A program made the translations under genes and the position numbers. Under the pieces are notes generated by a model. The model was not told the DNA's origin. It did no database searches and saw only the letters and a list, made by a program, of their open reading frames with translations. From IMG/VR virus record IMGVR_UViG_3300031576_000001, positions 62,001 to 126,000 of that record: a stretch of DNA of 64,000 bases. The stretch is one strand, 5' to 3'. Below are positions 33,317 to 56,433 of the stretch, one piece after another. Position 1 is the stretch's first letter. Each line of letters starts with the position of its first letter.

Positions 33317-33347
33317 CTCTTACGTACAACCCTCCCCGGGATTCACG
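33317..33347 (-). promoter_or_regulatory. Bipartite motif CGTGAATC-N15-CGTAAGAG (copy 1)
   Basis: Exact 8+8 match, 15-nt spacer, 5 nt upstream of ATG. Confidence 0.75.
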
Positions 33348-33379
33348 ACATTTCAGAGGATGCCCCTCCCCGTCACCTG

Positions 33380-34009
33380 TAACCAAGGGGGCTCCTGGGG
33401 CTCTTGGTTTTTCTTGCTTCGCCGGGCGGGCTTCTCCGTCACGACCCAGGCAGCACAACCGAGGGGGCTCCGCTGTTGCAAATCCTGGTAGACACGCTCG
33501 CCGGCTTGCTCAGCCTCGCTCCCCTTGCCGTAATCGTACAGAGCGTCCATCTGACGCACCGAGAGGTGGTTGGGGTAGCGCCTCTCCTCGTCCTTCTGGT
33601 TAAGCCACTCTTCGATCTGCGCCTTGATGCTCTTCTTGAAGTCGCCCCGGGGGTTGGTACGCATACAGCCCCAGCACAGGGCGTACAACTCCTCGAAAGG
33701 CAGCGTGAAGAGGGAGCGCTGCCAGTGCTCGCTCCAAGAGGGCATGACGCCAGCCGACCACGCGAAGTGCCAGGACGAGGCATTCTCAACCCACTCCTCC
33801 ACGGAGAGCCACGCGGGCAGCGTGACGGGCAGAACCTCGTAAACCTTCTTCTCGACGAGACGGTCAGCACAGGGGATCGTGACCGTCTCGTCGAGGTTGA
33901 CTTCGCCCTCGACGTAGACCCCCATGGGGCTGCGGGGGGTAGAGGCGTTCTCCCCGTGGGCACGGAAGATGACTTGGTGGGTAGCGAAGAGGTTTTCGGA
34001 TGTGGACAT
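33380..34009 (-). CDS. Hypothetical protein (209 aa, TTA stop)
   Basis: GC3-rich ORF; ends EPPW-TTA. Confidence 0.65.
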
Positions 34010-34015
34010 ACCAAT

Positions 34016-34046
34016 CTCTTACGCACAACCTCGCCCACGATTCACG
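34016..34046 (-). promoter_or_regulatory. Bipartite motif (copy 2)
   Basis: CGTGAATC-N15-CGTAAGAG, 6 nt upstream of ATG 34009. Confidence 0.75.
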
Positions 34047-34054
34047 AAAATCTG

Positions 34055-34366
34055 TTAGGGCTTCTCCAGCCTGGCTTTGGTGTCCAGGTTCTTAGCTACC
34101 CGTTGTAGGACAAGGTAGCCAAGCAAGTCAAGCTCAGCATCTTCGTTGTCCGGGCTCCCTGACTCCGTGGCATGTTTGATGCGTGAGAGCTTGTCGTCCA
34201 TCCTGACCTTGATTTGATCGGTGGGTGAGGCGGACGAGAACACGCGAAGAGGGTCAATGGCTGCGTTACCGTACCGTTGGTTCTTCTCGGTCAGCAGCTT
34301 AGCTACCTCTTCGCAGACAACCCGGATCTCGGCTTGAACTTCGCTTAGTGTGGGCATGGCGTACAC
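34055..34366 (-). CDS. Nucleotide-modification-associated domain 1 (DUF1599-like) protein
   Basis: EKNQRYGNAA...VRMDDKLSRIK...DLLGYLVL signature. Confidence 0.65.
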   Translation of the reverse strand: MYAMPTLSEVQAEIRVVCEEVAKLLTEKNQRYGNAAIDPLRVFSSASPTDQIKVRMDDKLSRIKHATESGSPDNEDAELDLLGYLVLQRVAKNLDTKARLEKP

Positions 34367-34370
34367 CTTT

Positions 34371-34709
34371 TCAGGGGTTTAGAGGGCAACCGAGGGTCGT
34401 GGCAGTCTTGGCAACCTCTTCGGGTGTGGGGGTACCAGCCCTCCAAAGCCAAAGGGTCGTGTTGACGTGCCAGTCCCTTACCCCAACGATACTCACGGGG
34501 TCACCCCCGCTGACCTTACAGTAGTTCACCTTGTCGGGCGTGGTGAGGTGTTTGTAGGAGCACCACGACCCAAAGGCTAGCAGGGTAAGGGCTACCGCCA
34601 GACTCCAGAAAGCCCAGGCGTCACCATCGTACAGGACAACCGAGGTTGTGTGGGGCAAACCGTCGTGCTCACAGTGGGGGCATTTGGCTGTGGTTTTCTG
34701 TACTTGCAT
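34371..34709 (-). CDS. Small membrane-anchored protein (C...LGC family)
   Basis: Hydrophobic AWAFWSLAVALTLLAFG segment, then YC...ATTLGC; start uncertain. Confidence 0.5.
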   Translation of the reverse strand: MQVQKTTAKCPHCEHDGLPHTTSVVLYDGDAWAFWSLAVALTLLAFGSWCSYKHLTTPDKVNYCKVSGGDPVSIVGVRDWHVNTTLWLWRAGTPTPEEVAKTATTLGCPLNP

Positions 34710-34902
34710 GGTACGAGAGTACACCGAAAGCCACCGCGTAAGCAGCCTCTTCCCAGAGAGCGTCATAGCCCCTCGCCACGCACAGTGCCTTCTCGGTCCC
34801 CTTTGCGTCAACCGCTACGACCATGAGCCCTCTTCGGAAAAGAGCGTAGCCCAGCGTCAGGGCAGTCTTTATTGCAGCCTCTTTGGCTTGCTGAGAGGTC
34901 AT
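34669..34902 (-). CDS. Hypothetical protein (77 aa)
   Basis: ORF tiling only. Confidence 0.4.
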   Translation of the reverse strand: MTSQQAKEAAIKTALTLGYALFRRGLMVVAVDAKGTEKALCVARGYDALWEEAAYAVAFGVLSYHASTENHSQMPPL

Positions 34903-34939
34903 ACAAGGGCTCAGCCTTCCAAGGTTATCAGGCTAAAGA

Positions 34940-36175
34940 TAACCAGGAACCGTCCCGTATACCCTCGGGTTTCGTAGCCACGGGCGCGCTCGCCCCGGGG
35001 GACAGCCTTTGGTTGTCCGTGATCAGGTGCCACCCCTTTTGAAAGCCTAGCTCGGTCAGGGTTTGCAGGTTGGCTAGCAGCACGGAGCCCTCCAACGCCT
35101 TGCTGTTCTCTTGGTAGTGCTCGAACCAGCGGACCCCGTACTTGCCATACACAGAGGCAGGCGTGGGGGTGTAGGGTGGCTTCTCGCCCGTGACAATCTG
35201 ATAGCCCAAAGAGTTACACAGGTGGACGTAGACCCTCTCCGAGTTTTCCGTGTCCCACACGTCCAAACCAAACTCGTCCTCTTCGATAGCCTGGGTCATC
35301 TGACCCCCAGCCGCCATCCCCATGTCCACGTTGAGCGACGCCAGCATGAAAGCACTGGTCTCTTCTGTGCCCCGCTCCATGTCGCAGTTGAGCCTGGTGT
35401 CCAGGGTGTAGTCACTGAGAGCTATCGCCCCCTTGGTCACGTTCTCCCCCCAGGCGCACCCAATGGGTACCGTGCTCGACTCGAAAGCGCTGTAGTTCAC
35501 GGTCATGCCCCCGCTACTCTCTGAAATGGTTGTGATGCCACCCTCGAAGGACTGACCCGTACCCCCCCCCTTGCGACTCCTGGTAAAGCCCCGGAAAGTC
35601 TGAGCCATGACAGGGAAGCGAGCCTCGTAGACTTCGCGCTTCATGGGGAAGACTTCGATCTGAAGACCCCCGAAGCTCTCTTTGCCCGAGAGTTGAGACT
35701 CCACCGTCCAGCCTTGACCCAAAGGCGCCGCTACGAACTGGCGGATCTTCCCCTTCTCTACGCAGAAGCCGTCAATCCAGGGCTGCTTGGGGGCGACCAT
35801 GTAGTCCTTCTCACGCAGCCCCGCGGACCACTCTTCCCCGGTCACGGCTGACCTCATACCCGCCGCCACCTTGATCGCAAAGGGGTAGTGCGCCCTGCGG
35901 TCACCCGCGTACCCTGCCTTGAAAGCGATGTAGAGCGCCTCCGCTTGGTACATGGGTAGGAAGATACCCCCGTGTTTGTTCCACTCGGGGGGTACGCGGT
36001 CCTTGTAGCGGTCAACCTCCCTGAGAGGGAAGGCGCCCAGCCCGGGAGGTAGCCGGTGGGTCTCGTCGTTGTCGGGGAGCCTCAGCGTGCGTTGAAAATC
36101 CAGGGTGAGGTTTGCGTTTGCGTGCCCGACCTTACCGGAGAGGTCAAAAACAAGGGTTTCATTGTGTATCCTCAT
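34940..36175 (-). CDS. Conserved hypothetical protein (TTA stop)
   Basis: FQRTLRLPD...LPPGLGAFPL...LPMYQAEA family recalled from bacteria and fungi; ends RDGSW-TTA. Confidence 0.7.
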
Positions 36176-36229
36176 CTTGGGGGCTACCCTACCATGGAAC
36201 CCACCCCTTGTCTAGCCTGTCAACCCTCC

Positions 36230-36433
36230 TCACCACGACGTTACACCAGAGTCCCCCGGGCTTAGAGTGTGCTCGATCCTAGCCCGGAGGGCATAGGCAC
36301 GGTCAGCCTCTTGGTGTCGCTCTGGAGTCAAATTTGGGGCACCCAGGTTGATCCGGTTCAGGATGAACGCTGAGAGGGACTGAACGAGAAGTTGACCCTC
36401 ATCGGGCGAGAGGGTGATGGTGATGCTTAGCAT
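36230..36433 (-). CDS. Hypothetical protein (67 aa)
   Basis: AGGAAGG upstream; tiles with neighbours. Confidence 0.45.
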   Translation of the reverse strand: MLSITITLSPDEGQLLVQSLSAFILNRINLGAPNLTPERHQEADRAYALRARIEHTLSPGDSGVTSW

Positions 36434-36447
36434 GGTGCTCTACCTTC

Positions 36448-36768
36448 CTAGGCGGGCCTTCCGCCCTTGAACTTGAGTTTCAGGTCGTTGTGCTGCAACA
36501 CAACCTTGTCGTGGTCGCTGTAGCCTAGCTGAACCCACTCCAAGAGTTGAAGCTGTACACCCTTGCCAGAGGTGCTCACCTTGCGTGTAGGTCCACGTAG
36601 GCTGTTGATGACCAACAGCGCACACCAACCCTCTTTGCCAGGCTGCCGCAGGTACCGGTGTGCTGCTCGGCGGGCGCTAGTCTTGCTACGCCAGTTACCC
36701 AGGACAGCGCTACCGACCCAAGTGTCAGCCCGGCAGCCTATCACGGCGTACCAGTAAACGTGTTGCAT
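36448..36768 (-). CDS. Hypothetical basic protein (106 aa)
   Basis: GGAG upstream; tiles with neighbours. Confidence 0.45.
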   Translation of the reverse strand: MQHVYWYAVIGCRADTWVGSAVLGNWRSKTSARRAAHRYLRQPGKEGWCALLVINSLRGPTRKVSTSGKGVQLQLLEWVQLGYSDHDKVVLQHNDLKLKFKGGRPA

Positions 36769-36794
36769 GAGGCTCCGTTACACCGTGGCAAAAA

Positions 36795-37172
36795 TTACCG
36801 TCCCTTGGTGCCAGGGATACTGATCTCGTGGAGGCAGCGTGCAGCGGTACTCACCGCAAGGTAAAACTGCGACACGGCAAAGGCGCGCTCACCAGGGATG
36901 GTAGTCGGGCTGAGATCGATCACGGTTTGGACCCCCCCGTGTGAGGGCAACAGGTTGATCGTAGCCGTAGCCCAGTCAGGGATACCGGCGGCGGGCGAGT
37001 AGCCAAAGGTAAGGGAGGTCTTCTCACCCCTCTTTAGCCGGGCTTCGCAGAGAACAGCCAACTCCTCTGCGAAAGGAGCCCCCTCAAGGTACAGGTTGTA
37101 CCCCAAGTCAAGGAGGTCAAGGGCTTGCGTGGCGATCTGGTTCGCCAACTTGTTGAGTCGAGGTTTTTTCAT
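36795..37172 (-). CDS. Hypothetical protein (125 aa)
   Basis: AGGAGG SD and ATG just after an in-frame TTA; second half of track ORF 36795..37388. Confidence 0.65.
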   Translation of the reverse strand: MKKPRLNKLANQIATQALDLLDLGYNLYLEGAPFAEELAVLCEARLKRGEKTSLTFGYSPAAGIPDWATATINLLPSHGGVQTVIDLSPTTIPGERAFAVSQFYLAVSTAARCLHEISIPGTKGR

Positions 37173-37190
37173 GTGGCCCCTCCTTCTACG

Positions 37191-37388
37191 TAACGAGTAG
37201 ACAGTGACCGGCTGGTCGTACCCCACGGTCACGTCGTAGCGCTTTGTGCCGTCGTGCAGGGTGAGGTACACTTTGCCCTGGCTCTTGTAGACCTCCAAGA
37301 CTTCGCCCTTGGCGACGCCCTCGGGGAGGTACATCTTTACGATCTCAGCCTTGTAGACGTGGGCGGCACAGGTTTCGGTGGTGTTCAT
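37191..37388 (-). CDS. Small hypothetical protein (65 aa, TTA stop)
   Basis: First half of the same track ORF; ends TVYS-TTA; downstream of motif copy 3. Confidence 0.6.
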
Positions 37389-37393
37389 AACCC

Positions 37394-37424
37394 CTCTTAC
37401 GCTAGTCCACGCTCAAGATTCACG
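37394..37424 (-). promoter_or_regulatory. Bipartite motif (copy 3)
   Basis: CGTGAATC-N15-CGTAAGAG, 5 nt upstream of ATG 37388. Confidence 0.75.
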
Positions 37425-37677
37425 CCTTATTGAGGGCACCGCAGAGAACCTCTTTGCGACACTTGGGGCACACCCTGTAAGGACTGTACGCCGGGTGTGC
37501 CTCAACGGGGTCAGAGGTGGTTGGCTGTGTGCAGAGCCCGCAAACCTCTGGCAAGGGGGGCAGATGTCCCTCTACTTGTAGCGCCAGATGTAGGATCTCG
37601 TCCGCCACCGTCCTGAGAATCTGAGCGAACCTACGCATGACGCGGGCACTACACCCTTTGCTCCCCTCTCTTAGCAA
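37420..37677 (-). CDS. Small Zn-finger-like protein
   Basis: CGLC and CPKC pairs; start may be ATG 37638. Confidence 0.45.
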   Translation of the reverse strand: MLREGSKGCSARVMRRFAQILRTVADEILHLALQVEGHLPPLPEVCGLCTQPTTSDPVEAHPAYSPYRVCPKCRKEVLCGALNKA

Positions 37678-37682
37678 GAACC

Positions 37683-38189
37683 ATGTCAGGGGTACTTTTT
37701 TACCGCGGTCAGCAGCTAGGGCGTAACGACCTCAACCTCTTCTTGACCAACGCCAGCGACCACCCCACGCAAGCCGCTGAGATTTGGTACGCCCTCTATG
37801 ATTTCACCACGGGCTTTGAGTGCCTCGTAGGAGACGAGCGCCGTACTCCCCTCATGCCCAGCCTGGGTGAGTACTACGCCTCGGTCGTGATCCCTACGGA
37901 CGCCAGGATCGGGGGCTACAGGGTACGGTGGTTCTTCCGAGAGACCGTGGGCTCACCGCTGCAATCCGTGGTCCAAGAGTTTCAGGTTATCGACAAAAAC
38001 CAGTTCAGTCCGTCCGTATTCAGTGACACCATGACGGATTTGATACGTCGTCTGCGTATTCTGGTCCGAGATAACTGCTTGGATGGGGCAGAAACTATTG
38101 AAATTGTGATTGACCAGGACCAGAAAGAGATTACACTGGAGGATCTCTGGGACGCACTTCATGACCTCTCCCCCCTCCCCCCATCCTGA
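37683..38189 (+). CDS. N-terminal half of a fractured neck/head-tail gene fused to a 37-aa N-intein
   Basis: Ig-like domain, then LRILVRDN|CLDGAETIEI...ITLEDLWDAL (intein block A) from 38076; TGA stop. Confidence 0.75.
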   Translation: MSGVLFYRGQQLGRNDLNLFLTNASDHPTQAAEIWYALYDFTTGFECLVGDERRTPLMPSLGEYYASVVIPTDARIGGYRVRWFFRETVGSPLQSVVQEFQVIDKNQFSPSVFSDTMTDLIRRLRILVRDNCLDGAETIEIVIDQDQKEITLEDLWDALHDLSPLPPS

Positions 38190-39075
38190 ACTGGTACCCT
38201 ACTTGGAAAAGCACCAAATTACTTGGGAAGTGTTCTCGAACACACGTCTTAAACCACGTAGCGTGGTAGCTAAGAGACGCGCGATTGTCACTGAGATACA
38301 CGAAACTGGAGCAACCTGGGCGCACATGGTGGCGATTACGTGTTTGAGTCAAGGGTCGATTCAACGCTTGAGTCAAGCTAAAGGTAACCCTCTAGTGAAG
38401 CAACGAAAGCAACAAATTGCAGCAGAGCTTGGACGCCAAGGGAAAGGTGCTAAAAAGCCGTGGTTGACCTTGAAGCTCCAAGCTGATTGGGAATCTGGAA
38501 AGTTCGACTTCCACAAAGGGCGTATTCGTCCACAGTTTGAAGTAGACAAGATTCAAGCGTCTTGGGCGGACCCTGCACGACATGATAACCAAGCTCAAAT
38601 GATGAAGTCTTGCTGGCAAGACCCTAACTTTCGAGACAACCTTCTATCTTTTCACCGATCTGACACAGAACGGGTAAAACGCTCCCAGGCTCAGGCCCAG
38701 CGTATGCTCGATCATCCTGCAACTTACATGGGGGGCCGTGGCGAGTATGTTTCAACACAAAAAGCTACAGTATCTAAAACCTGGGTGCGTAGTTCTTTTG
38801 AGAAGCGGTACGTTGAAATACTAGAACGCGACCCAACTGTTCTTTCTTACGAGTATGAGCCTCTTTATGTTTTGCCGGATGGTAGGCACATCCTTCCTGA
38901 CTTTCTAGTGCGCTATCGGGACGGAAAGCAAGAGCTTGTTGAGGTTAAGGCTAAGTGGGTACTTGCTATGCCTGTCACATATAAAGCACAAGTGCGCCTA
39001 GCACTAGCGCGAGAGCTTGCAAATAGAGAAGCACTTGCCTTTAAAATCGTTACGGAGAATGACCTGTGGCCTTGA
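38161..39075 (+). mobile_element. Free-standing PD-(D/E)xK (TnsA-N-like) endonuclease gene between the split-intein halves
   Basis: SSFEKRY...YEYEP...LPDFLVRY...ELVEVKAKW; AT-richer than the flanks. Confidence 0.75.
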
Positions 39076-39941
39076 CTACTATTGAACGTAACCAAATACG
39101 TGCAGCATACCGGACAGGGCGACTAACCACCTGGGCTGTAAATAAAGAAGGGCAACGAGAGCTTCAACCTATCCAGGCTGTACACCAACACAACTTGCAG
39201 TCTGATGACTTGTACGCCGTTACCACAACACGGGGCACATCGTATATGACTGGGGGTCACCGGGTATTTCGCACCCCCACATTGAAGGTAGAAGCGTGCT
39301 CTTTGACGCAAAACTTCACTGTCCTTGGCGAAACCATCGTGACCTCAAGACTTGTCGGTAAAGCCAGAACGGTCTATGACTTGACTGTAGGTGTGTGGCA
39401 CAACTTCAGGTTGTGCCGTAGTGGGTTGGTGGTGTCAAACTCACCGGACCAAAACTACCGCTTCGTCCCCCCCTCTAGGGAGGCTACTATCTCTCAGTTC
39501 AATCGTGTCTTTGGTTTTCTGTGGGAGGATTACGAGATGGACGAGTATATTCAGCGCTCGCTCGACCTGATCATCGCGTCCCCACCTCGTACACCTTTTG
39601 CCAGCGTCGAGCAAATGATAGTGCAGAAGAGGGAATGGACAACACTGTTGCTTACAGGTGCGGCAACATTTGCAATAAGGGCAATGATGCTAAACTGGAT
39701 TGCGAATGAATTTGATTTTTCCGTGGGGGGTATCTCTCTAAACATAGAGAAGTCGTCTAAGTACGAGAGTGCGAAAGGTAACTTTGAAGAGGAGTTTACC
39801 CGCCAGCTAGAACAAAGTAAAAAAACGGTACTGATTATCAGAGGGCTACAGCAGCCCCGTTTCGGAATCGGCGTGAGATCCTCCTTCGGGAGTTTTGTGG
39901 GTAGAAATGTGGTAACCCCTCGTAAATTCATAGGTTTCTTA
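39066..39941 (+). CDS. 125-aa C-intein fused to the C-terminal half of the fractured gene (TTA stop)
   Basis: TGGH (block B), VYDLTV..WHNF (block F), VVSN|S junction at 39440/39441; ends PRKFIGF-TTA. Confidence 0.78.
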
Positions 39942-39994
39942 GCTCTGGTATTGGGGCTATTGCACTTACACTACAGTGGTGCTACCGTACTGGT

Positions 39995-41362
39995 GTGTCA
40001 ATAAAAGGCTCCTGTTTGTGCCCTTGCTGTGGAAAAGACATGGCACCCCATGCAATACATGGTCACACCGCGGTCTGTGAGGCTTGGAAAGCGTCTCGTG
40101 GGAAACCCTGGCCCCAGTTCAAATACAGTTACAGTCGTGCGAAGTACCTACCTGGCTTGGTGGAGGGTGTAGACTTTCTTCGATGCCACGTTTGCCTAAC
40201 CAATGGTTGGGACTTCAGGTTCAATCGTCTAGTGCAGCACTTGGCAATCCACGGGTTGTCTGAGTCGGAGTACTTGAGCCTATTCCCAAGTAAGCTCGTG
40301 CGTTTGGCACTGACCAACGAGCGTCGCAAGGCTTCTGTTCGTGCGAAGTACGGAGTAGACTTCATCGCGCAAGTCGAGGAATGTAAAGAGAAGTCGAGGA
40401 ACACCATGGTAGAACATTATGGTGTTCCCTCAGCTATGCAGTCCGAAGATGTCCGAGCGAAAGCCACTAAAACCAACCTTGAGCGGTATGGTTCGGAAAA
40501 CCCGTTTGGTTCCAAAGAGGTTCAGAAGAAAATACGAAAGACCCTTTTGTCTAAGTATGGGGTTGCGAATCCCCAACAAGTGTCTGACATACGAACCAGA
40601 ACGCTACAGACTAACAAGGAACGGTACGGGTCGGAGCACTTCTTCCAAACGCCTGATTTTGACACGGTACGAGCGGCAACGTGCCAAGAGCGTTATGGTG
40701 CTCCTCACCATATGCAATCGGTTGAGGGTCGGGCCAACCATGAAGCGGCATTCATTGCAAAGTACGGGGTACCTAACCCATTTCTTATCCCTGAGATACG
40801 GGACCGTGCTTATGCCACTAATGTAGCTAACCATGGGGGCGTACACGCCCTTGCACACCCGGACGTGATTGCAGCACGGAAAAGAAACCTCTTGGCACTC
40901 TACGGCGTGGATAACATATCTAAGGTGCCTGCAATCAAGGACAAAATCATAGCAAAAGTGCGTGCCAGCTTCTCTGGTGCCCCTAAGAGAACTACACCCG
41001 AGCGGATAGTTGAGGGGTTCTCACCTGAATGTGTGGTTTATTCAGGTGATTGGTCCTACTGGGTTACATGGGCTAACGGCTACCATAAGAACCCAGACTT
41101 TGTGATTCTCACCCCGCAACAGTTGGAGGAGTACAAGGCTGGCGCAGTCCTGAATGCCCTCCGTACTAGTAAGGTTATTGAGGTCAATGGGGACTTTTGG
41201 CACACTAAGTACAGAGGTGTGACACGAGAGGAGCGGGAACAACAATTCTTTGAGGGTTACGCTTCCATAGGGGTAACCTGTCTCATTCTTTGGGAGTTGG
41301 ATCTTTACGCTTCAACGTCAGACGCTATACGTGCCAAAGTTGAGGCATTCTGTTGTTCCTAA
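39995..41362 (+). mobile_element. Putative homing endonuclease (Zn fingers, KYG-type repeats, Vsr/PD-(D/E)xK-like C-terminus)
   Basis: CPCC and CHVC, repeated (K/R)YGV units, KNPDF...VIEVNGDFWH; flanked by a duplicated host 3' end. Confidence 0.75.
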
Positions 41363-41382
41363 GTAAGAGATCCCAAATCGGG

Positions 41383-41406
41383 CCTCGCAAATTTATAGGT
41401 TTCTTA
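41383..41406 (+). repeat. Orphan duplicate of the last 8 codons (PRKFIGF-TTA) of gene 39066..39941
   Basis: CCTCGCAAATTTATAGGTTTCTTA versus CCTCGTAAATTCATAGGTTTCTTA (39918-39941); the two differences are synonymous. Confidence 0.85.
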
Positions 41407-41423
41407 TCTGGTAAGCTGTCAGC

Positions 41424-41591: not shown

Positions 41592-41704
41592 GTCCCAAGC
41601 CCCTGTGGATAACTTGAAGCCGTGTGCGCGACGTAGTGCTTGGTACTCAGGTCCATCTTTCAGGGAGCATCCTGTCTGGTCATACGCTCCGGTAACAGAA
41701 GAGT

Positions 41705-41962: not shown

Positions 41963-41994
41963 CAGCTACCCTTAGCCTCTGGGAACAGAAGGGG

Positions 41995-42303
41995 TTACAA
42001 TGCACCTCCCACGAGAACCTCTTTGCAGCCGAGCCGCGTCTTGGCAATCTCGACCACACTGCTAAGCCCTTGGGGGTTCTGCACAGCAAACTCGGCAATC
42101 GTCTGGTCAAGGTAAACGTAGCGGTGGGCGTAGACTGTGAGCCCTCCCCCAGTGTAGACGAGGGTACACACGCCCGTAGAACGTGAGAGGTAGTGTGACA
42201 GACGAACCAGACCGATAAGTGTGCCCACGACGAGGCTGAGGCATACCAGGATGGCGAATAGGTCACGGGCGACGGTAGAGGGGGTGTCTTTCATGCTTGT
42301 CAC
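41995..42303 (-). CDS. Small membrane-anchored protein (C...LGC family)
   Basis: Hydrophobic LFAILVCLSLVVGTLIGLV; GVCTLVY...KTRLGC. Confidence 0.55.
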   Translation of the reverse strand: MTSMKDTPSTVARDLFAILVCLSLVVGTLIGLVRLSHYLSRSTGVCTLVYTGGGLTVYAHRYVYLDQTIAEFAVQNPQGLSSVVEIAKTRLGCKEVLVGGAL

Positions 42304-42324
42304 AGTACACCCCTGTGCTCTTCG

Positions 42325-48430: not shown

Positions 48431-48475
48431 GCCTCGCCCTTTCCACCTCTCTTAAAGGAGAAGGCTTAGCCCACC

Positions 48476-49615: not shown

Positions 49616-49688
49616 GGGTAACCTCCCACAGGTGTCCCCTGAAGAGTGCAGACAACCTAGAGACGGTAACTCTGCTACCGTAACCACC

Positions 49689-50126
49689 ATGCCCAAGTAC
49701 ACCTTCGCGTGCCCGGATTGCGAGCTACTCTTTGACCGTACCCTCAAGCTAGCCAGCCACTCAGAGCACCCCTGCCCTCTTTGCAAGAGGCTAGCCCCAC
49801 GCCAGTGGTCAGAGCAAAACTTTGCAGCCTCTTTCGCGGTCCCTGCTAACAAGCCTACAGGGAACACGGGGGTACACGACCTGGATAACCCTACCGCAGA
49901 CAAAGCCGTGGGACGGTCTGCTTTCTCTCGGTGGGAGTCCTACGAGGGGCGCAAGGAAGTCAAGGAAAAGGCTCGCCAAGAGGGCGGTACACACGCACTC
50001 ATCCGTCACGACGACGGGCAACACACCGACTACGAGCCAATGACCGCCCTTGGGCTTGACGCCCATCGTAAGCTCGCCAGGGAAGCCTACAGCAAGGCAA
50101 AGAAATCTTCTATCCTACCCAGCTTA
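49689..50126 (+). CDS. FmdB-like Zn-ribbon protein (TTA stop)
   Basis: MPKYTFACPDC...CPLC; ends ILPS-TTA-GGG-TAG. Confidence 0.6.
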
Positions 50127-50248
50127 GGGTAGAGAGCACGCTGGGCGCCTTCTTTGTGGAATAAACGCGGCCCTGCCTCTCTAGATGTACACCCAAACCC
50201 AAATGATCATGAAGATAACCCACCTTTCCACAAGGGTTACCCAATACC

Positions 50249-53200
50249 ATGGCTTTTGGACCGTTTCCGACCTACGCCCCTCCTGGGGTGTATACTCGCA
50301 CCACCCGCGACGCTAACCTTCAAGGCGTGCTCGCCAACCTCAGAATCCCCTTCGTTATCGGGGTGGGTCAGGAGGAGCTAGAGCAGCTTGACTATGAGCT
50401 AATCCGCGGGTCTAGCTCGACCTCGGACACCCCTGTCTTCAACGAAGACCCCAGTGAGCGTTGGGTTCTGGACGAGATCAACCCTGCTAACCCCACGTTG
50501 GGCGCTCAGACGGGCGCCTTGACCAAGCTCCGGGTCAGAAACTTCCCCATTGTGGACGGTCAGGGGTTCGGTATCACGACCAATGACGCTCGCAAGGTGA
50601 CGGTCAAGGTCAACGGTGTCCCTGTCACGGTGGGAGCGGTACAGGGCAGCACGGGAATGGTCACGTTGCAAGTGCCCACCCAGCCCACGGACGTGGTGAG
50701 GGTGACTTACCAGTTCCACCGGGGGGACACGGCGTTTCAGGATGACGTGTCTGCCCAGGTCACAGCGGACTCGGCGGTACTTCTCAGCCCCGGCGTAGAG
50801 CCGTACAACATTCAGGCTGGCACGTCGGACCAGTTCAAGCTCAAGGTCAACGGGACGAGCCGCACGGTGGTTTTTGTGGCGAACCCCGCAACCACGGCGG
50901 CATCCGTCAAGAGCCAGATTGACGCCGCCATGCTGGGTACGGGGCTATCCACCTCGGTCTTCACGGACAACCAGGGGCTAAAGCACCTACAGCTAAACGC
51001 TCAGGTCTCTCTGGAAATCGAGGACGGCACCGCCAACGGTATCCTGGGTTTCACCCAGGGCAACAAGACGACGCGCAACCAAGTCTTTCAAGTTTTCCAG
51101 CGCCCCGTGGTAGACGGAACCAGCGCCGGTCTGACCACCACGGACCCCTCTAAGGTCGTGGTCAAGGTCAACGGGCTGCAAGTCCTAGCCTCTGCGGTGG
51201 ATGGCACCAATGGCAAGGTTACCCTACCCAGCGCGCCACCCCCAGGGGCGAGCGTGACGGTAGCCTACTTCTCGAACACCTGGCAGGACACCTTTGACTA
51301 CCTCCCCAACACGGCGGTAACCACGGTTCTACGTTCGGGTATCTCTCCCGGGCGTAGTGATTACATCCAGGGCCCTGACTTTGTAGTCAGTAACCCCTCC
51401 CCCGACGTGAGCATCATTCACTGGGGAGCCTCGGTCTCGGTAGCGTCTGACATTCGCACGGCGGGCGCAGAGCTTTTTGACGGCACGCAGGTACTTCCAA
51501 CCCTGGTTGACGAACGGCGCTACCTGGCAGAGTGTGAGCGGTTCACGGATACCACGGTGGTCCCGAGCCAGGTTTCCTCGACCGTGTTCCTCCTGCCCGA
51601 CGTGCCTACGCTGGGTAATGGCAGGGATACCCCTCTCGGTCAGACCCTCTACAACTCGATTTCTAACGCCAGGGCAGCCCTGGACAGCAACCGCCCAGAC
51701 CTTGTAACCGTGTACACCGGCAGAACCCTCTCCGATGCTCTGGGTCGGAGCGCCGCTACGGTCGTTGCTGTGGACGGCGTGACCCGCAAGGTGACGCTGA
51801 AAGACCCTGTACCCCCGGACCACCTGGCGTTTGCTACCTTCTACTACAACCGGCTTGTTGACGACACCTACGTCCTGACCAACAGGGTAGCTGGTCCGGT
51901 AGGCACGGGACAGTATGAGGTTCTCTCGGCTCTCCGGGCGGTGAACCTCTTCCAAGTCAAGTTTGGCACCAAGGTAGGCTTTGCTCAGACCCTCCAGTGG
52001 CCCCGCGGCGTAGAGAACATCCCCGATGCTTTCCACACCGGGGACGGCACCCCCGTGTCGGAAATCGTCACGGTCACCTTTGCCACGGCGCCCGCGACCA
52101 ACGCGGTCTTCACCAACGACGGCGCCGCGCCTTACAACTTCTATGTACCCAGCGCCACCTGGGTAACGAAGCTCAACCTTGTAGACCAGACAACCAACCT
52201 CGTCACCGCAACCCGTGGCGTCATGGTCTCGTCCCGTGTCCCCCTCACGGCGGGCATGATCACGGTCCCCGTAGCGCCAGATAACATTCTGGAACTCACG
52301 GTGGACACGGGCAGCATCACGGGCACAACCAACTCAGAGATCCTCTCCGTGTCGGTAGCGTTGCCCACGGGCGCTCAAACCCCCGTGGCTCTGGTCACCG
52401 CCATCAATGCCGCGATTGACGCCGCGCTGACAGCGGAGCTTGGACCCACGGTGGCTACGCTCTGCTCGACCGTGACCATTGGTACGGACGCCGTGTTCAT
52501 CATCCGGTCGTTCACTACGCCCGCAGCCTTGCCGTCAGGCTTTGACACCAAGAGCACGGTGAGCATTGCACAGGGCACCGCCGAGACCCTTCTAGGCTTC
52601 ACCACCTTCCAAACTGCCTCTGGGTCGCCCCAGTCGATCAACAAGCCCGCCACCTTGGTTGGCTCCCTCGTTGGACCCTACAACATCACGGCTGGGCTCA
52701 ACGACACCTTCAGGGTCCGGGTCAACGGGACAGACTACACGATCTTCCTGCCCACCGGACCCGCCGTGACCACGGCAGCCATGGTCGCCCAGATCAACCT
52801 GTCCACGGCGCTCTCCCTCGCCAGCGTGGGTACGTTGTCCAACCTGGGTAAGGTCCGGCTTACTGCACCTAGCAACACGGACCAAAGCTCCCTGGTCATT
52901 CTGAACGGCTCCAGCAACACCGTACTCGGCGTCACAGAGAACGATACCGCCTCTCAGGTGAGGGTCACCAACCAAGAGGTAGTCAACTCCCTCATGGCTA
53001 CGGCAGGCTTCGCTGCGAGCGCGATTGCCTACCCCCAGACCTTCTCGGGTCAGGGGTCGTTTGTCACCATCGAGACCCTGAGCACGGGCGCGGGCGCAAG
53101 CATTGCCTTTGCAAACTCGGCTAACTCAGCCTTCAACCTCCTGGCGGGCACCGGAATTCGCCCTGGCATTGACGGTGACAACGGAGAGAATGCTCACGAC

Positions 53201-54538
53201 ATTTTCAACGTGACCAGCACCAACGTAGAGGGTTCTGCGGGCACAGGGACACCGGGTCAGACGTACACGGACGTTCAGACCGGGCTACGGTTCAGCGTGC
53301 TACCGGCTAGCTCCGGGGGGTACACGCCCGGCGGCTCGTTTACCCTCTTGGTGAGCCCTACCTTTGACGTGTCCCCCAGCATCCCCTCTTACTCGGTTCC
53401 TGGGTTGGAGCTTCTGGTCACCAACACGGTGGGCGTAGGAGCCAACGACACGGCGAACCTGCTCACGTTTGACCCCAGCGGAGCGGAGCCCAACGTAGGG
53501 GATTTCTACTACATAAGCTACCGCTACCTCAAGCAAGACTTTGACGCCAGGGTCTACCAGACGTTCAAGACCATCGAGGCTAACTTCGGTCGTCTGGGCG
53601 CTGATAGTCCCGTGACGCTGGGCGCTTACCTGGCTCTTCTCAACGGCGCCGTGCTGGTGGGTATCAAGCAGGTTCGTAAGGTGGTCAACACCGCAGAGGG
53701 TTCTACCCAGGACTACATTGACGCGATTGCGGACCTGGCTACGCCCCTCCCCGGCAACATCAAGCCTGACATTCTGCTGTCGCTCAACCCCAACGTGCAG
53801 ATCACGACCTACCAGGCTCAACACTGCGAGGTCATGAGCAACGAGCGTAACCAAAGCGAGCGCATGGGCTTCTTTGGGTTCGCATCCGGCACGGTGCCCA
53901 CGTCAGCGCAAGCGGTAGCCAAGAGCATCCTGTCTACCCGAATGGTGGGCTTCTACCCCGACTCGGCGGTTATCACGCTGACCAACGAGCTAGGAGAGAG
54001 CTTTGAGTCCCAGGTCAACGGCACCTTCCTCGCGGCGGCTGCCATGGGGGCGGTAGTCTCCCCCACCGTGGACGTGGCTACGCCCTACACAAGGCGCCGT
54101 ATCGTTGGCATTACCCGGCTGCCCAGGATTCTGGACCCCGTGGAAATGAACCAAACGGCCGTCTCGGGGCTAACCGTGCTTGAAGACCTGGACCCCATCA
54201 TCAGGATTCGCCACGGTTTGACCACGGACATGAGCAGTATCCTCAACAGGCTGCCCACCGTGACCCAGATTTCTGACCACGTTCAGCAACAAAGCCGGGC
54301 TACGCTGGACCCCTTCGTGGGCACCAAGTTTCTAGAGACACGCGCCAACGAGGTTGAGGTCAGCATGACCTCCCTCTTCCGCGGGTTGAAGCAAGCTGAG
54401 ATCGTAGGAGCCTTCAACGGCTTCTCCGCTTTCACGGACCCTGACGACGTAACGTCGCTCATTTTGGAGGGTTTCTACGCACCCATCTTCCCATTGGAAT
54501 TTTTGCAGCTACGGTTCAATTTGAGAGCCAGGTTGTAA
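50249..54538 (+). CDS. Contractile tail sheath protein with large beta-rich insertions (1429 aa)
   Basis: N-terminal YAPPGVY; C-terminal sheath domain (AVSGLTVLED...IRHGLTT...APIFPLEFLQLRF). Confidence 0.85.
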   Translation: MAFGPFPTYAPPGVYTRTTRDANLQGVLANLRIPFVIGVGQEELEQLDYELIRGSSSTSDTPVFNEDPSERWVLDEINPANPTLGAQTGALTKLRVRNFPIVDGQGFGITTNDARKVTVKVNGVPVTVGAVQGSTGMVTLQVPTQPTDVVRVTYQFHRGDTAFQDDVSAQVTADSAVLLSPGVEPYNIQAGTSDQFKLKVNGTSRTVVFVANPATTAASVKSQIDAAMLGTGLSTSVFTDNQGLKHLQLNAQVSLEIEDGTANGILGFTQGNKTTRNQVFQVFQRPVVDGTSAGLTTTDPSKVVVKVNGLQVLASAVDGTNGKVTLPSAPPPGASVTVAYFSNTWQDTFDYLPNTAVTTVLRSGISPGRSDYIQGPDFVVSNPSPDVSIIHWGASVSVASDIRTAGAELFDGTQVLPTLVDERRYLAECERFTDTTVVPSQVSSTVFLLPDVPTLGNGRDTPLGQTLYNSISNARAALDSNRPDLVTVYTGRTLSDALGRSAATVVAVDGVTRKVTLKDPVPPDHLAFATFYYNRLVDDTYVLTNRVAGPVGTGQYEVLSALRAVNLFQVKFGTKVGFAQTLQWPRGVENIPDAFHTGDGTPVSEIVTVTFATAPATNAVFTNDGAAPYNFYVPSATWVTKLNLVDQTTNLVTATRGVMVSSRVPLTAGMITVPVAPDNILELTVDTGSITGTTNSEILSVSVALPTGAQTPVALVTAINAAIDAALTAELGPTVATLCSTVTIGTDAVFIIRSFTTPAALPSGFDTKSTVSIAQGTAETLLGFTTFQTASGSPQSINKPATLVGSLVGPYNITAGLNDTFRVRVNGTDYTIFLPTGPAVTTAAMVAQINLSTALSLASVGTLSNLGKVRLTAPSNTDQSSLVILNGSSNTVLGVTENDTASQVRVTNQEVVNSLMATAGFAASAIAYPQTFSGQGSFVTIETLSTGAGASIAFANSANSAFNLLAGTGIRPGIDGDNGENAHDIFNVTSTNVEGSAGTGTPGQTYTDVQTGLRFSVLPASSGGYTPGGSFTLLVSPTFDVSPSIPSYSVPGLELLVTNTVGVGANDTANLLTFDPSGAEPNVGDFYYISYRYLKQDFDARVYQTFKTIEANFGRLGADSPVTLGAYLALLNGAVLVGIKQVRKVVNTAEGSTQDYIDAIADLATPLPGNIKPDILLSLNPNVQITTYQAQHCEVMSNERNQSERMGFFGFASGTVPTSAQAVAKSILSTRMVGFYPDSAVITLTNELGESFESQVNGTFLAAAAMGAVVSPTVDVATPYTRRRIVGITRLPRILDPVEMNQTAVSGLTVLEDLDPIIRIRHGLTTDMSSILNRLPTVTQISDHVQQQSRATLDPFVGTKFLETRANEVEVSMTSLFRGLKQAEIVGAFNGFSAFTDPDDVTSLILEGFYAPIFPLEFLQLRFNLRARL

Positions 54539-54570
54539 AAAGCCCACGTTTTCGGTGGGGGTGAGCATAG

Positions 54571-54624
54571 TTCCTTGACGTGATTAGAGAAGTGGCGTAG
54601 TGACACTCTAATCACGTCAAGGAA
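54571..54624. repeat. Perfect 19-bp inverted repeat, 16-nt loop, covering the RBS of the downstream endonuclease gene
   Basis: TTCCTTGACGTGATTAGAG (54571-54589) and CTCTAATCACGTCAAGGAA (54606-54624). Confidence 0.8.
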
Positions 54625-54626
54625 GA

Positions 54627-56384
54627 GTGCATCGCATGACCACGCCAGAGGATACCTACGCAGACTTCGAGGGTAACGAGTCCTTCAACAGTCTGGTCAA
54701 GAAGCACCACGTAGCTCCCACCACCCTTCGTCAGTGGTGGTTGGCGCACTTTGGGGCAGTTCTTGTAGCTGAGAGGGGTAAGCGTATCCAAAGTGCCAGT
54801 GCCGTGATCACAGGGCGCTCACGTAAGGGCGCTACCCTTGTTTACAAGACGCTCACGGACACTTGCTGCCGCTGCGGGGTGGCTATGACCCTGACTGTAC
54901 TACAGAAGGCGATGACCAAGAGGGTCATCTGTGAGCCTTGTGAAGCTCAAGAGAGGGGCGTGGACCGTTACTGTCCGGTGTGTGGTTTCGGCTGCATCGG
55001 TAACAAGGGCTTGTCTACCCACATGCACCGTCCAGGGGTGACGGACCCAGAGGGTCATAAGCAGTACCTTGAGCAGAAGTCACAAGAAGAGGAGGCTGCT
55101 CGGTTCGAGGGTAAGGAGGAGGGCACGGATTACGTGGTGTGTCGTCTCTGCGGTCAGCGCGACACTTGGCTAGGTCGGCACCTCAAGGCGGCGCACCAGA
55201 TGGGAGCCGAGGACTACCGCATCCAGTTTTCCGGGGCGCTAGTCAGCTCCAAGAGTACCTCCGAGAAGCGTTCCAAGGCTCTTGTGGCTTACAGCCGAGC
55301 GCACCCTACGGCGGGTCAAAAGAAAACTGTACTCTGCTCCTCGTGTGATCTGCCGCATGACGTGGGGTGGTCGTTCTCACTTATTATACACGATAATCGG
55401 TGCGACGACTGTAAGGCGCGCGAGGAGGAGCTTGCAGAAGAGACCTACTGGGAAGGGAAAACGGAGCGTGAGGATTACGCAGTCTGTCAAGTCTGTGGGC
55501 ACAAGGCGAACAACCTCAACTCCCATATTATGTCGGAACACCCGGAGTTGGTGGGTAAGTATGTCGTGGTCTACCCTGGTAGCCTCATCTCCTCGCTCAA
55601 GAGTCCGATCCGTGACAAATCAAAAAACGTAGGTTCGCAGCACACCGCAGAGACCAAGCACTTGATGAGTGTGAACGCTGGACGCTGGAATAAGGGACTC
55701 ACTAAGGAGACGGATGAGCGTGTAGCCTGTGGTGCTGAGGCTCGAAAGGGGTATCCAGGGTGGGCTAAGGGCCTTACCAAGGAAACAGACCCACGGATAG
55801 CAGCACTAGCTGAGAAACTGTCTGCGTTGAGGCTGGGGGTACCACACGAAGCGGCTAGAGTTGTCTTGACTACGGAGGACTTTCTCCCTTACCGGCTAAA
55901 GAATGGTAAGGTGGTGGTAGGTTGGGCGTCAGCGGGTTTGGGCTACAGCGTACCCACAGTCACCCGCGAGGCAAAGCGGCTTGGGTTGCCCACCTATTCC
56001 AAGTGCGTTACGCAGACCGCTCTCGTCGCTCAGTTGGCTATCCTCTTGGGTGGTGCCACCTTTCAGCAAGAGTGGTCCTCCTCATGTTACCGAAATCCTC
56101 CCACGGACCACCCTTTCCGGTTTGATGGTTACTTCCCAGACCACAAGCTCTTGGTGGAATTTGAGGGGTTTTGCCACTATACCTTTCCGTCAGTTTACTT
56201 CCCTCTTGGTCGAGAAGTCGAGTACGCAGCCATGCAAGAGCGTGACCGTGAGAAGGTACGTCAGGTAAAGAAAGCCGGTGAGTTCCAACTCCTTGTCATC
56301 CATGAGTCGGAACCCTTTGCAGACCCCGGGTACCTCACCCAACGTCTACGTGACTTGGGTTTCCAAGTCACGCTCCCCGAGTAA
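54627..56384 (+). mobile_element. Putative homing endonuclease (Zn fingers, WNKGLTKETD repeats, PD-(D/E)xK-like C-terminus)
   Basis: Repeated DYxVCxxCG...HL units; WNKGLTKETDERVA twice (variant); FRFDGYF...LLVEFEG. Start may be ATG 54636. Confidence 0.72.
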
Positions 56385-56402
56385 ACCGCACCTAAACTTT
56401 CG

Positions 56403-56433
56403 CGTGAATCCTGTAGTCCCCTCTACGTAAGAG
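56403..56433 (+). promoter_or_regulatory. Bipartite motif (copy 4)
   Basis: CGTGAATC-N15-CGTAAGAG, 5 nt upstream of ATG 56439. Confidence 0.75.

What the first reader, a model, noticed from the sequence alone, without database searches (positions are those of the whole stretch)
33317..56433. Exactly conserved bipartite motif CGTGAATC-N15-CGTAAGAG before four accessory genes
Four copies (33317-33347 -, 34016-34046 -, 37394-37424 -, 56403-56433 +) match at 16/16 positions, have an unrelated 15-nt spacer and sit 5-6 nt upstream of an ATG. The layout resembles ECF-sigma promoters (B. subtilis SigW: TGAAAC-N16-CGTA). The distance to ATG suggests leaderless or near-leaderless mRNAs. It defines a small regulon of genes of unknown function.
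Basis: partly seen in the sequence, partly recalled or inferred. Interest (0 to 1): 0.6.

Follow-up and report, generated by a model that had tools for sequence, protein, structure and literature searches.

The report
Phage promoter motif for near-leaderless genes
The repeated two-part motif is real and is most likely a class of promoters in a huge uncultivated phage; they sit directly against the start codons of at least 23 small, unrelated genes, which makes this a well-defined but fairly ordinary kind of phage regulatory signal.

Summary
All four copies of CGTGAATC-N15-CGTAAGAG are exact, against 0.02 expected by chance.

The window is part of a 322,633-bp contig of a huge phage from a cave metagenome. 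It carries 8 exact copies, 22 copies with at most 2 mismatches (reversed control 0), and 28 profile hits.

- **Position:** every strong copy points at a gene, 5-8 nt before an ATG.
- **Downstream genes:** they are small, unrelated and match no known family.
- **Conserved flanks:** an A/T triplet upstream, AG before the second box, and GGGTT-ATG after it.
- **Weaker copies:** four lie 12-39 nt from the start codon with a separate Shine-Dalgarno-like stretch in between. The element is therefore not just a ribosome site.
- **Related phage (terminase 75% identical):** it carries yTGAAAG-N15-CGTAnnAG at the same positions, including before two orthologous genes only about 40% identical.
- **Second element:** GGTGTA lies 10-11 nt before about 30 other ATGs that mostly lack a Shine-Dalgarno sequence. 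This supports leaderless starts.

Best reading: a sigma-type -35/-10 promoter class, probably for early or accessory genes, giving near-leaderless mRNAs.

The layout resembles an ECF promoter. However, the 322 kb (about 68% complete) hold no sigma region-2 gene and no RNA polymerase gene, only a protein with two sigma-region-4-like domains. No RNA data exist, so transcription starts are untested.

The parts
33309..33352 (-). Motif copy 1. Core 33317-33347; A/T triplet 33350-33352; GGGTT, then ATG at 33311-33309.
   Evidence: Exact match; flanks shown; ATG 5 nt after the core.
34007..34051 (-). Motif copy 2. Core 34016-34046; A/T triplet 34049-34051; ATG 6 nt after the core.
   Evidence: An orthologous copy lies before the orthologous gene in the related phage.
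37386..37429 (-). Motif copy 3. Core 37394-37424; A/T triplet 37427-37429; GGGTT, then ATG at 37388-37386.
56398..56441 (+). Motif copy 4. Core 56403-56433; A/T triplet 56398-56400; ATG at 56439-56441.
   Evidence: An orthologous copy lies before the orthologous gene in the related phage.
33108..33311 (-). Gene downstream of copy 1: 67 aa, no family match.
   Evidence: ORF and distance; no Pfam match; no paralogue.
33353..34009 (-). Gene downstream of copy 2: 218 aa, no family match. Its orthologue in the related phage is 42% identical.
36795..37388 (-). Gene downstream of copy 3: 197 aa, no family match.
56439..56699 (+). Gene downstream of copy 4: 86 aa, no family match. It is homologous to the N-terminus of a 291-aa ORF that follows the motif in the related phage.
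36766..36784 (-). Context, not part of the motif: one of the second-class elements, GGTGTA-N10-ATG. Others in or near the finding lie at 32211-32231(-), 34707-34725(-), 37636-37655(-) and 56674-56694(+).
   Evidence: Seven in the window against 1.33 expected. Genome-wide spacing peak at 10-11 nt. No -35 element.

Best explanation
The motif is one promoter class of a huge phage.

**Proposed reading of the element**
- GTGAAy, at about -35 to -30 if the A of the ATG is +1, acts as the -35 element. A short A/T stretch lies just upstream of it.
- After a 15-17 nt non-specific spacer, (AG)CGTAAGAG acts as the -10 element.
- Transcription then starts at or within a few nucleotides of the ATG. Most of these mRNAs would be leaderless or nearly so.
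- A minority of copies have a real leader with its own Shine-Dalgarno-like stretch.

**What it drives**
- At least 23 mostly small, unrelated genes of unknown function, often one promoter per gene.
- One large methyltransferase/SNF2-helicase gene.
- This is the pattern of phage early or accessory (host-takeover, anti-defence) genes.

**What reads it**
A bacterial-type RNA polymerase holoenzyme. The specificity factor is unresolved. It could be an ECF-like sigma from the host or from the missing third of the genome, the host primary sigma with an unusual consensus, or host polymerase helped by the phage's tandem sigma-region-4 protein.

**Shown:** the motif itself, its copy number, orientation, fixed position, extended conservation, conservation in a relative, and the lack of RNA structure.
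**Inferred:** promoter function, the start site, the temporal class and the identity of the factor.
For: **Excess over chance**
- 4 copies against 0.02 expected in the window.
- 22 copies against 0 for the control in the contig.
- 28 profile hits, with a null maximum of 9.9 bits.

**Position and orientation**
- Every strong copy is co-oriented with a gene that starts 5-8 nt downstream.
- The element often fills a roughly 45-nt intergenic gap.

**Independence from the coding sequence**
- The downstream proteins are not paralogues.
- They match no Pfam family.
- The repeat is therefore not carried along by gene duplication.

**Conserved positions that were not used to select the copies**
- A/T triplet upstream in 22/22 copies.
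- AG before box 2 in 17-18 of 22.
- GGG and TT after box 2.

**Geometry**
- With the A of the ATG as +1, GTGAAT falls at -35 to -30.
- A 17-nt spacer then leads to GTAAGA at -12 to -7.
- This is read directly from the sequence.

**Weaker copies keep the two boxes but move away from the start codon**
- They lie 12, 21, 22 and 39 nt away, with GAGGAG, AGGTGAGG, AGAGGTGA or GAAAGGG in between.
- One copy has CGTAATAT-N5-ATG and no Shine-Dalgarno-like bases.

**Start codons**
- All 20 called start codons are ATG, against 74% genome-wide.
- This fits the ATG requirement of leaderless mRNAs noted in PMC3898074.

**Second element**
- GGTGTA lies 10-11 nt before about 30 other ATGs.
- Those leaders carry a Shine-Dalgarno-like 4-mer in 4/28 cases, against 122/299 for other genes.
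- It recurs in the relative.

**Related phage** (terminase 75% and portal 78% identical)
- Seven copies of yTGAAAG-N15-CGTAnnAG lie 4-9 nt before an ATG.
- Two of them precede orthologues of window genes that are only about 40% identical.
- TGAA and CGTAAGAG are invariant there and the spacers are unrelated.

**RNA structure**
- The copies share no fold; mean z is -0.1.

**Fit to known promoter rules**
- Sigma-W promoters use TGAAAC and CGTA.
- ECF promoters stay near consensus, with 14-17 bp spacers (PMC5758882, PMC7776599).
Against: - No transcription start has been seen, and no RNA run holds this sequence.
- The 322 kb held contain no sigma region 2, ECF sigma, single-subunit polymerase or multisubunit polymerase. 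The reader of the motif is therefore unknown.
- GAGG inside box 2 sits 4 nt before the ATG and could serve as a Shine-Dalgarno sequence on read-through transcripts. Part of the conservation may be translational.
- The -10 box lacks the T at -7 that primary sigma factors need.
- The motif was not found in more distant relatives, nor elsewhere in IMG/VR or the JGI metagenomes.
- Gene calls are my own crude ones.
- The 16 motif positions used to pick copies are not independent evidence of conservation.
Confidence: 0.72

Rival explanations
1. The motif is the operator of a phage DNA-binding regulator, either a repressor or an activator. The tandem sigma-region-4 protein g065 could bind one box with each helix-turn-helix. 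The operator would overlap a minimal promoter of the GGTGTA type, whose weaker version here is AGCGTA. On this reading the bipartite conservation reflects a transcription factor rather than a sigma factor.
For: - g065 has two helix-turn-helix domains. The first is a clear sigma region 4 (E 1e-13; Z 9.6 to SigR region 4). The second resembles region 4 or LuxR.
- The box centres lie 23 bp apart.
- Both boxes begin CGTRA.
- G-Y-G-T-A is shared with the second element at almost the same distance from the ATG.
- Conservation is stronger than most sigma sites need.
Against: - The recognition helices of g065 are nearly invariant across a family found on many distant huge-phage contigs. Yet the motif is absent from distant relatives.
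- 20 kb around a 46%-identical family member shows no such element.
- The first helix-turn-helix is identical in the related phage although its first box differs.
- Nothing ties g065 to the motif beyond being in the same genome.
Confidence: 0.12
2. The element acts at the RNA level. It would be a ribosome-binding or translational-control site on polycistronic transcripts, with AAGAGGGG as the Shine-Dalgarno sequence and the first box as the binding site of a translational regulator.
For: - GAGG lies 4 nt before the ATG.
- Many copies sit only 5-8 nt after the stop codon of an upstream gene on the same strand.
- TAAGAGG resembles the canonical TAAGGAGG.
Against: - The first box lies 30 nt upstream at a fixed DNA-like -35/-10 spacing, with an A/T tract further upstream.
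- There is no shared RNA fold.
- Copies that are 12-39 nt from the start carry a separate Shine-Dalgarno-like stretch, and one copy has no purine run at all.
- Other genes place GGAG or GGAGG about 2 nt further from the ATG.
- Six copies follow an opposite-strand neighbour, where no read-through transcript exists.
Confidence: 0.06
3. The element is a recombination or cassette-boundary repeat that marks mobile accessory-gene cassettes.
For: It flanks small, non-conserved accessory genes scattered over the genome.
Against: - It always lies on the 5' side of the gene, co-oriented with it and at a fixed 5-8 nt from the ATG.
- There is no inverted-repeat or hairpin character.
- It is kept before orthologous genes at syntenic positions in the relative.
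- No partner site lies at the 3' ends of the genes.
Confidence: 0.02

Closest known systems
ECF sigma promoters, in particular Bacillus subtilis sigma-W (TGAAAC ... CGTA) (PMC5758882, PMC7776599)
   Same: - A two-block layout, with TGAA-containing first box and an invariant CGTA second box.
- A 15-nt gap, inside the 14-17 bp range of ECF spacers.
- Very close adherence to consensus across the regulon.
- An A/T or T tract next to the -35 box.
   Different: - The first box is GTGAAyC, mostly AAT rather than AAC.
- The second box extends to CGTAAGAG plus GGG.
- No ECF sigma gene (region 2 plus region 4) was found in the 322 kb held, and no autoregulated sigma operon.
- The promoters abut start codons.
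Promoters of leaderless genes in Actinobacteria and other phyla (-10 TANNNT a few nt before the start codon; PMC3898074, PMC3160421)
   Same: - A -10-like box ends 5-8 nt before the start codon.
- All start codons are ATG.
- A second -10-only class in the same genome lacks a Shine-Dalgarno sequence.
   Different: - The -10 box is CGTAAGAG or GGTGTA rather than TANNNT; the last base is G, not T.
- A strong -35 box is present.
- A GAGG lies inside the box.
- Transcription starts have not been mapped.
Arrays of early and middle promoters of large phages that use the host polymerase (T4: PMC2988021; SPO1: PMC13401047; PA5oct: PMC7318152)
   Same: - Many near-identical promoters, often one per small gene of unknown function.
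- They are scattered on both strands.
- The phage appears to lack its own polymerase.
   Different: - The consensus is far from the host sigma-70/sigma-A consensus that those early promoters use.
- No MotA/AsiA-type or gp28/gp34-type factor was identified.
- The host is unknown.
Promoters of the multisubunit polymerases of jumbo phages (phiKZ, AR9; PMC7598289, PMC5312081)
   Same: Genome-wide, class-specific conserved upstream motifs in a phage genome larger than 200 kb.
   Different: - Those motifs are short, single-block and A/T-rich, and are read by phage-encoded beta/beta'-like subunits.
- No such subunits were detected here.
- The motif here is bipartite, with sigma-like spacing.

Membership tests
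ECF-sigma-dependent promoter | -10 block containing CGT (CGTA or CGTC) | tested here: met
   CGTA is invariant in the 22 copies with at most 2 mismatches, although these positions helped to select the copies. It is also kept in 6 of 7 copies in the relative, found with a different first box. The rule comes from PMC5758882.
ECF-sigma-dependent promoter | -35 block with a conserved AAC core (such as TGAAAC or GGAAC) | tested here: inconclusive
   TGAA is invariant, but the next base is T in 16, C in 5 and G in 1 of 22 copies. The relative has TGAAAG.
ECF-sigma-dependent promoter | Spacer of 14-17 bp between the blocks, and near-consensus sites across the regulon | tested here: met
   The gap between TGAAyC and CGTA is 15 nt in all copies, and 8 copies are exact. 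The range comes from PMC5758882.
ECF-sigma-dependent promoter | A cognate ECF sigma (regions 2 and 4), usually autoregulated | tested here: not met
   Sigma70_r2, the sigma70-ECF model TIGR02937 and Sigma70_ECF gave no region-2 match in the 322 kb. The record is estimated to be 68% complete, and the host could supply the factor.
ECF-sigma-dependent promoter | Transcription start about 6-9 nt after CGT | not testable with these tools
   No RNA run holds the sequence.
Primary sigma (sigma-70/sigma-A) promoter | -35 TTGACA and a 17 +/- 1 bp spacer | tested here: inconclusive
   GTGAAT matches 3/6 and the relative's TTGAAA matches 5/6. The spacer to GTAAGA or TAAGAG is 17-18 nt.
Primary sigma (sigma-70/sigma-A) promoter | -10 TAnnnT with a conserved last T | tested here: not met
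   The hexamer is TAAGAG with G last in 22/22 copies. Only one weak copy has TAATAT. The consensus scan found no sigma-70-type site in 31500-38500 above chance.
Leaderless mRNA start | -10 element ending a few nt before the start codon, and an ATG start | tested here: met
   The distance is 5-8 nt in the strong copies, and ATG starts 20/20 called genes.
Leaderless mRNA start | No Shine-Dalgarno sequence; 5' end mapped within +/-5 nt of the start codon | tested here: inconclusive
   GAGG lies 4 nt before the ATG inside box 2. The 5' ends are not testable.
Jumbo-phage multisubunit-polymerase promoter | Phage-encoded beta/beta'-like polymerase subunits | tested here: not met
   RNA_pol_Rpb1_2 and RNA_pol_Rpb2_6 gave no match, while the controls rang. 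The very divergent phage subunits could escape these models.
Phage single-subunit-polymerase promoter (T7-like) | A T7-like polymerase gene and a contiguous promoter of about 20 bp | tested here: inconclusive
   PF00940 gave no match, but the control genomes were also silent. The motif is bipartite with a free spacer, unlike T7-type promoters.

The most novel reading that the evidence does not exclude
The motif is read neither by a canonical sigma factor nor by a phage polymerase. Instead, host core or holoenzyme is redirected by the phage's tandem sigma-region-4 protein (the g065 family, widespread on huge-phage contigs and lacking region 2). The first box co-evolves with this protein between related phages (GTGAAyC against TTGAAAG). 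That would be a new type of phage-encoded promoter-specificity factor.
Probability: 0.1. Interest if true: 0.7.

Novelty: new member of a known kind. Interest (0 to 1): 0.36.

Why it matters
- **Temporal gene class.** The motif gives a clean, testable transcription signal for a lineage of uncultivated huge phages. It marks at least 23 genes, nearly all without known function, as one co-regulated and probably early set. That is the natural place to look for host-takeover and anti-defence functions.
- **Translation mode.** Together with the GGTGTA class, it suggests that this phage and its unknown host rely heavily on leaderless or near-leaderless translation.
- **Phage-host co-evolution.** The first box has changed in a concerted way between two related phages while the second box stayed fixed. 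This is a small natural experiment in promoter and factor co-evolution.
- **Overall.** None of this overturns current ideas. Conserved class-specific promoters are expected in large phages.

Tried and rejected
- **Gene duplication as the source of the repeat.** Rejected: all-against-all BLASTP found no similarity among the downstream proteins.
- **Conserved RNA hairpin.** Rejected: 23 copies folded one by one give a mean z of -0.1 and no common structure. A CCTCT/AGAGG pairing appears in only some copies.
- **Phage RNA polymerase or sigma factor.** No match for Sigma70_r2, RNA_pol (T7-type), Rpb1_2, Rpb2_6 or Sigma70_ECF. TIGR02937 and phrog_1740 hit only region-4-like parts, chiefly of g065. 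The sigma-like proteins of Tunturi_5 and LR745208.1 have no homologue here apart from the g065 family.
- **The motif in other phages.**
  - Absent from Tunturi_5 and LR745208.1.
  - No exact copies in IMG/VR.
  - Only the phage's own contig in the JGI metagenomes.
  - The relative's variant gave only three chance hits in low-GC phages.
- **Host identification.** The g065 family occurs in genome bins assigned to mixed phyla, so it gives no host signal. The nearest cultured phage by terminase infects an acidobacterium, but at only 28% identity.
- **RNA evidence.** Only two DNA runs from one cave-metagenome sample hold the region.
- **A -35 element for the GGTGTA class.** None above background.
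- **Linking g065 to either motif through a more distant family member's locus.** No GGTGTA spacing signal in L042 or L045.
- **Near-identical phage DNA.** None in the annotated phage collection.
Full report
**1. The observation**

The pattern CGTGAATC-N15-CGTAAGAG occurs four times in the window, at the stated coordinates and strands, with no mismatch. The expectation is 0.02 from 100 dinucleotide-preserving shuffles. Each copy is followed by an ATG after 5, 6, 5 and 5 nt on the same strand. The spacers are unrelated.

**2. Where the window lies**

- The window is bases 62001-126000 of a 322,633-bp IMG/VR virus record that CheckV rates 68% complete.
- The same contig is held in the JGI metagenomes. 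The only sequencing runs that hold it come from one cave-metagenome sample.
- It encodes a large terminase, a portal and long structural genes inside the window.
- It has an array of 38 tRNA genes and a CTA-anticodon tRNA elsewhere.
- By terminase, the nearest records are an uncultured 485-kb phage (46% identity) and the acidobacterial phage Tunturi_5 (28%) (PMC11924767).
- It is therefore a huge phage with an unknown host.

**3. The motif across the genome**

- The contig has 8 exact copies, 7 with one mismatch and 7 with two. The reversed control pattern has none up to two mismatches.
- A profile built from these 22 copies finds 28 sites above 12 bits. The reversed profile reaches at most 9.9 bits.
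- The 16 specified positions helped to choose the copies, so they are not independent evidence. The positions that were not selected are:
  - three bases 2-4 nt upstream of box 1 are A or T in 22/22 copies;
  - position 20 is T in 15 of 22;
  - positions 22-23 are A in 17 and G in 18 of 22;
  - box 2 is followed by GGG (17, 17 and 15 of 22), TT (14 and 14) and ATG.
- The extended consensus is WWW-NN-(C/T)GTGAA(T/C)C-N13-AG-CGTAAGAG-GGGTT-ATG.

**4. Relation to genes**

- I called genes with a simple codon-bias method, giving 346 genes. These calls are crude.
- Every strong copy points toward a gene whose ATG lies 5-8 nt after box 2. In many cases the upstream gene ends only 5-8 nt before the motif, so the element fills the whole intergenic gap.
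- Six copies follow a gene on the opposite strand.
- The downstream proteins are short: median 114 aa against 174 aa for other genes.
- They are not similar to one another and match no Pfam family apart from one sub-threshold hit.
- One copy with a leader precedes a 1268-aa methyltransferase/SNF2-helicase gene.
- The repeat is therefore a shared signal in front of unrelated genes, not a by-product of duplicated genes.

**5. Promoter or ribosome site?**

Part of box 2 (GAGG, 4 nt before the ATG) looks like a Shine-Dalgarno sequence. In other genes of this genome GGAG or GGAGG lies about 2 nt further from the ATG. Several results favour a promoter:

- The first box lies 30 nt upstream at a fixed distance, with an A/T tract beyond it.
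- With the A of the ATG as +1, GTGAAT occupies -35 to -30. A 17-nt spacer then leads to GTAAGA at -12 to -7, which is standard sigma-type geometry. This is read directly from the sequence.
- Weaker copies keep both boxes but lie 12, 21, 22 and 39 nt from the start codon, with a separate purine-rich stretch in between. One copy has CGTAATAT-N5-ATG with no purine run at all.
- No RNA fold is shared: mean z is -0.1 over 23 copies.
- All 20 called start codons are ATG, against 74% genome-wide. At 74% per gene, the chance of 20 out of 20 is about 0.002. A strict ATG requirement is known for leaderless mRNAs in E. coli (PMC3898074).

**6. A second element supports leaderless starts**

- GGTGTA is the other strongly enriched upstream word.
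- It is followed by ATG at 10-11 nt in 49 cases, against about 7 per spacing elsewhere.
- The window has 7 such sites against 1.33 expected.
- It has no -35 partner.
- The 9-12 nt between it and the start codon carry a Shine-Dalgarno-like 4-mer in only 4 of 28 cases, against 122 of 299 for other genes.
- The TA of GGTGTA then falls at about -12/-11 if transcription starts at the ATG. The TA of CGTA in the motif lies one base closer.
- In the minus-strand cluster at 32.2-37.7 kb of the window, the two kinds of element alternate in front of successive small genes.
- GGTGTA-type genes include DNA methyltransferases and a helicase.

**7. A related phage**

- The sigma-region-4 protein g065 has a 73%-identical homologue on a 150-kb Logan contig.
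- I walked along this contig by repeated look-ups and read 89.5 kb of it.
- It is syntenic with this phage. Identities are terminase 75%, portal 78% and the 1429-aa protein 82%.
- It holds seven copies of yTGAAAG-N15-CGTAnnAG, each 4-9 nt before an ATG.
- Two of them precede orthologues of window genes:
  - the gene after copy 2 (42% protein identity);
  - the gene after copy 4 (about 40% over 75 residues).
- In a four-way alignment of these upstream regions, only TGAA, CGTAAGAG and a few coding bases are invariant.
- The element, its spacing and its distance to the ATG are thus under selection.
- The flanks of the first box differ in a concerted way between the two phages (GTGAAyC against TTGAAAG). 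This points to a difference in whatever reads that box.
- GGTGTA-N11-13-ATG is also enriched in the relative.
- More distant relatives and the public collections lack the motif.

**8. What reads it?**

- The 322 kb contain no match to sigma region 2, ECF-type models, a T7-type polymerase or the catalytic domains of multisubunit polymerases. For the T7-type model the control genomes were also silent.
- The only sigma-like gene is g065 (G000:58756-59403, just upstream of the window, among replication genes).
  - Its residues 48-95 are a clear sigma region 4 (E 1e-13; Z 9.6 to SigR region 4 and 7.5 to sigma-W domain 4 bound to -35 DNA).
  - A second conserved helix-turn-helix block follows.
  - There is no region 2.
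- The g065 family is common on very long, phage-like contigs. LR745208.1 has two copies.
- Its recognition helices are almost invariant across the family, whereas the motif is specific to this lineage. A direct link is therefore only a possibility.
- Tunturi_5 and LR745208.1 do encode proteins with a region-2 match. A proper sigma in the missing third of this genome is thus plausible.

**9. Comparison with known systems**

- **ECF promoters.** This is the best sequence-level resemblance. Sigma-W uses TGAAAC and CGTA, ECF spacers range from 14 to 17 bp, and ECF promoters stay close to consensus (PMC5758882, PMC7776599). The motif meets the CGT, spacer and near-consensus criteria. It is ambiguous for the AAC core and fails the test for a cognate sigma gene in the sequence held.
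- **Primary-sigma promoters.** The motif fits the spacing, and in the relative the -35 hexamer (TTGAAA). It lacks the conserved last T of the -10 hexamer. From my own knowledge, not tested here: a GGG run just after the -10 hexamer is a known discriminator contact of primary sigma factors, so the conserved GGG need not be translational.
- **Leaderless genes.** The motif shares the short distance to an ATG start (PMC3898074), but its 5' ends are unmapped.
- **Jumbo-phage polymerase promoters.** These differ in form, and the enzyme is absent here (PMC7598289, PMC5312081).

**10. Verdict**

The finding is real and larger than reported. The most likely explanation (about 0.7) is a class of sigma-type promoters that drive near-leaderless transcripts of early or accessory genes.

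I cannot say which factor reads them. I would put an ECF-like sigma (from the host or the unsequenced part) slightly ahead of the host primary sigma. A role for g065 comes third.

The main rivals are a regulator's operator (about 0.12), a translational signal (about 0.06) and a recombination site (about 0.02).

This is a new member of a known kind of element. It is useful for annotating this phage lineage and moderately interesting.

Noticed in passing
window 32211-32231(-), 34707-34725(-), 36766-36784(-), 37636-37655(-), 40166-40185(+), 42292-42311(-), 56674-56694(+); about 30-45 sites genome-wide: A second upstream element: GGTGTA 10-11 nt before an ATG. It has no -35 partner, and its leaders mostly lack a Shine-Dalgarno sequence. 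It is also present at 11-13 nt before ATGs in the related phage. It looks like a -10-only promoter class for leaderless genes.
   Followed up: partly
G000:58756-59403 (+) = L013:7756-8403, 2.6 kb upstream of the window: A 215-aa protein with a clear sigma region 4 followed by a second region-4/LuxR-like helix-turn-helix and no region 2. Its family is widespread on contigs of 150-450 kb, and LR745208.1 has two paralogues. Its function is unknown. It is a candidate transcription factor of huge phages.
   Followed up: partly
G000 about 21.2-31.3 kb (L011:4209-14256) and G000 about 307.8 kb (L025:1803-1877, -): An array of 38 tRNA genes, plus a separate tRNA with a CTA anticodon that ARAGORN labels Pyl, which is amber-suppressor-like. 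I did not test whether TAG is recoded, and I applied no alternative code.
   Followed up: no
window 15631-18567 (+) and 21709-24387 (+); G000:188962-193050, 8686-12114 and 217393-219942: Several large genes carry intein or LAGLIDADG homing-endonuclease insertions: a structural-region gene, a methylase, a helicase and two paralogous DNA methyltransferases.
   Followed up: no
window 56439-56699 (+) and 56692-57339 (+): The 86-aa gene after motif copy 4 and the next 215-aa gene overlap by 8 nt in different frames. Together they correspond to a single 291-aa ORF in the related phage. This could be a split gene, a frameshift or an assembly error. A GGTGTA element sits just before the second ATG.
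   Followed up: partly
G000:1879-1909 (-) inside ORF 1601-2101; G000:57698-57728 (+) inside the 5'-3' exonuclease gene 57012-58751: Two motif copies lie inside longer open frames and precede in-frame internal ATGs. The two halves of the first ORF look like a tandem duplication. These may be nested genes or mis-joined gene calls.
   Followed up: partly
genome-wide; for example G000 238044/238068 and 276248/276259: CTAAGAG(G) and its complement CCTCTTAG are frequent, with about 50 CTAAGAG sites. Some form close inverted pairs. This is unexplained; they may be terminator stems or a methylase or restriction target.
   Followed up: no
first codons after the motif, for example window 37385-37377 (-): The third codon is ACC in 6 of 19 motif-driven genes, against 12 of 327 others, and several N-termini read M-(T/N)-T-(T/S)-E. 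This may be a preference of the initially transcribed or translated region, or chance.
   Followed up: partly
G000:255632-259438 (+) and G000:304339-304752 (+): A methyltransferase/SNF2-helicase fusion of 1268 aa sits behind a motif copy with a leader. A pentapeptide-repeat protein lies two genes downstream of another copy. Both are plausible anti-restriction or early functions.
   Followed up: no
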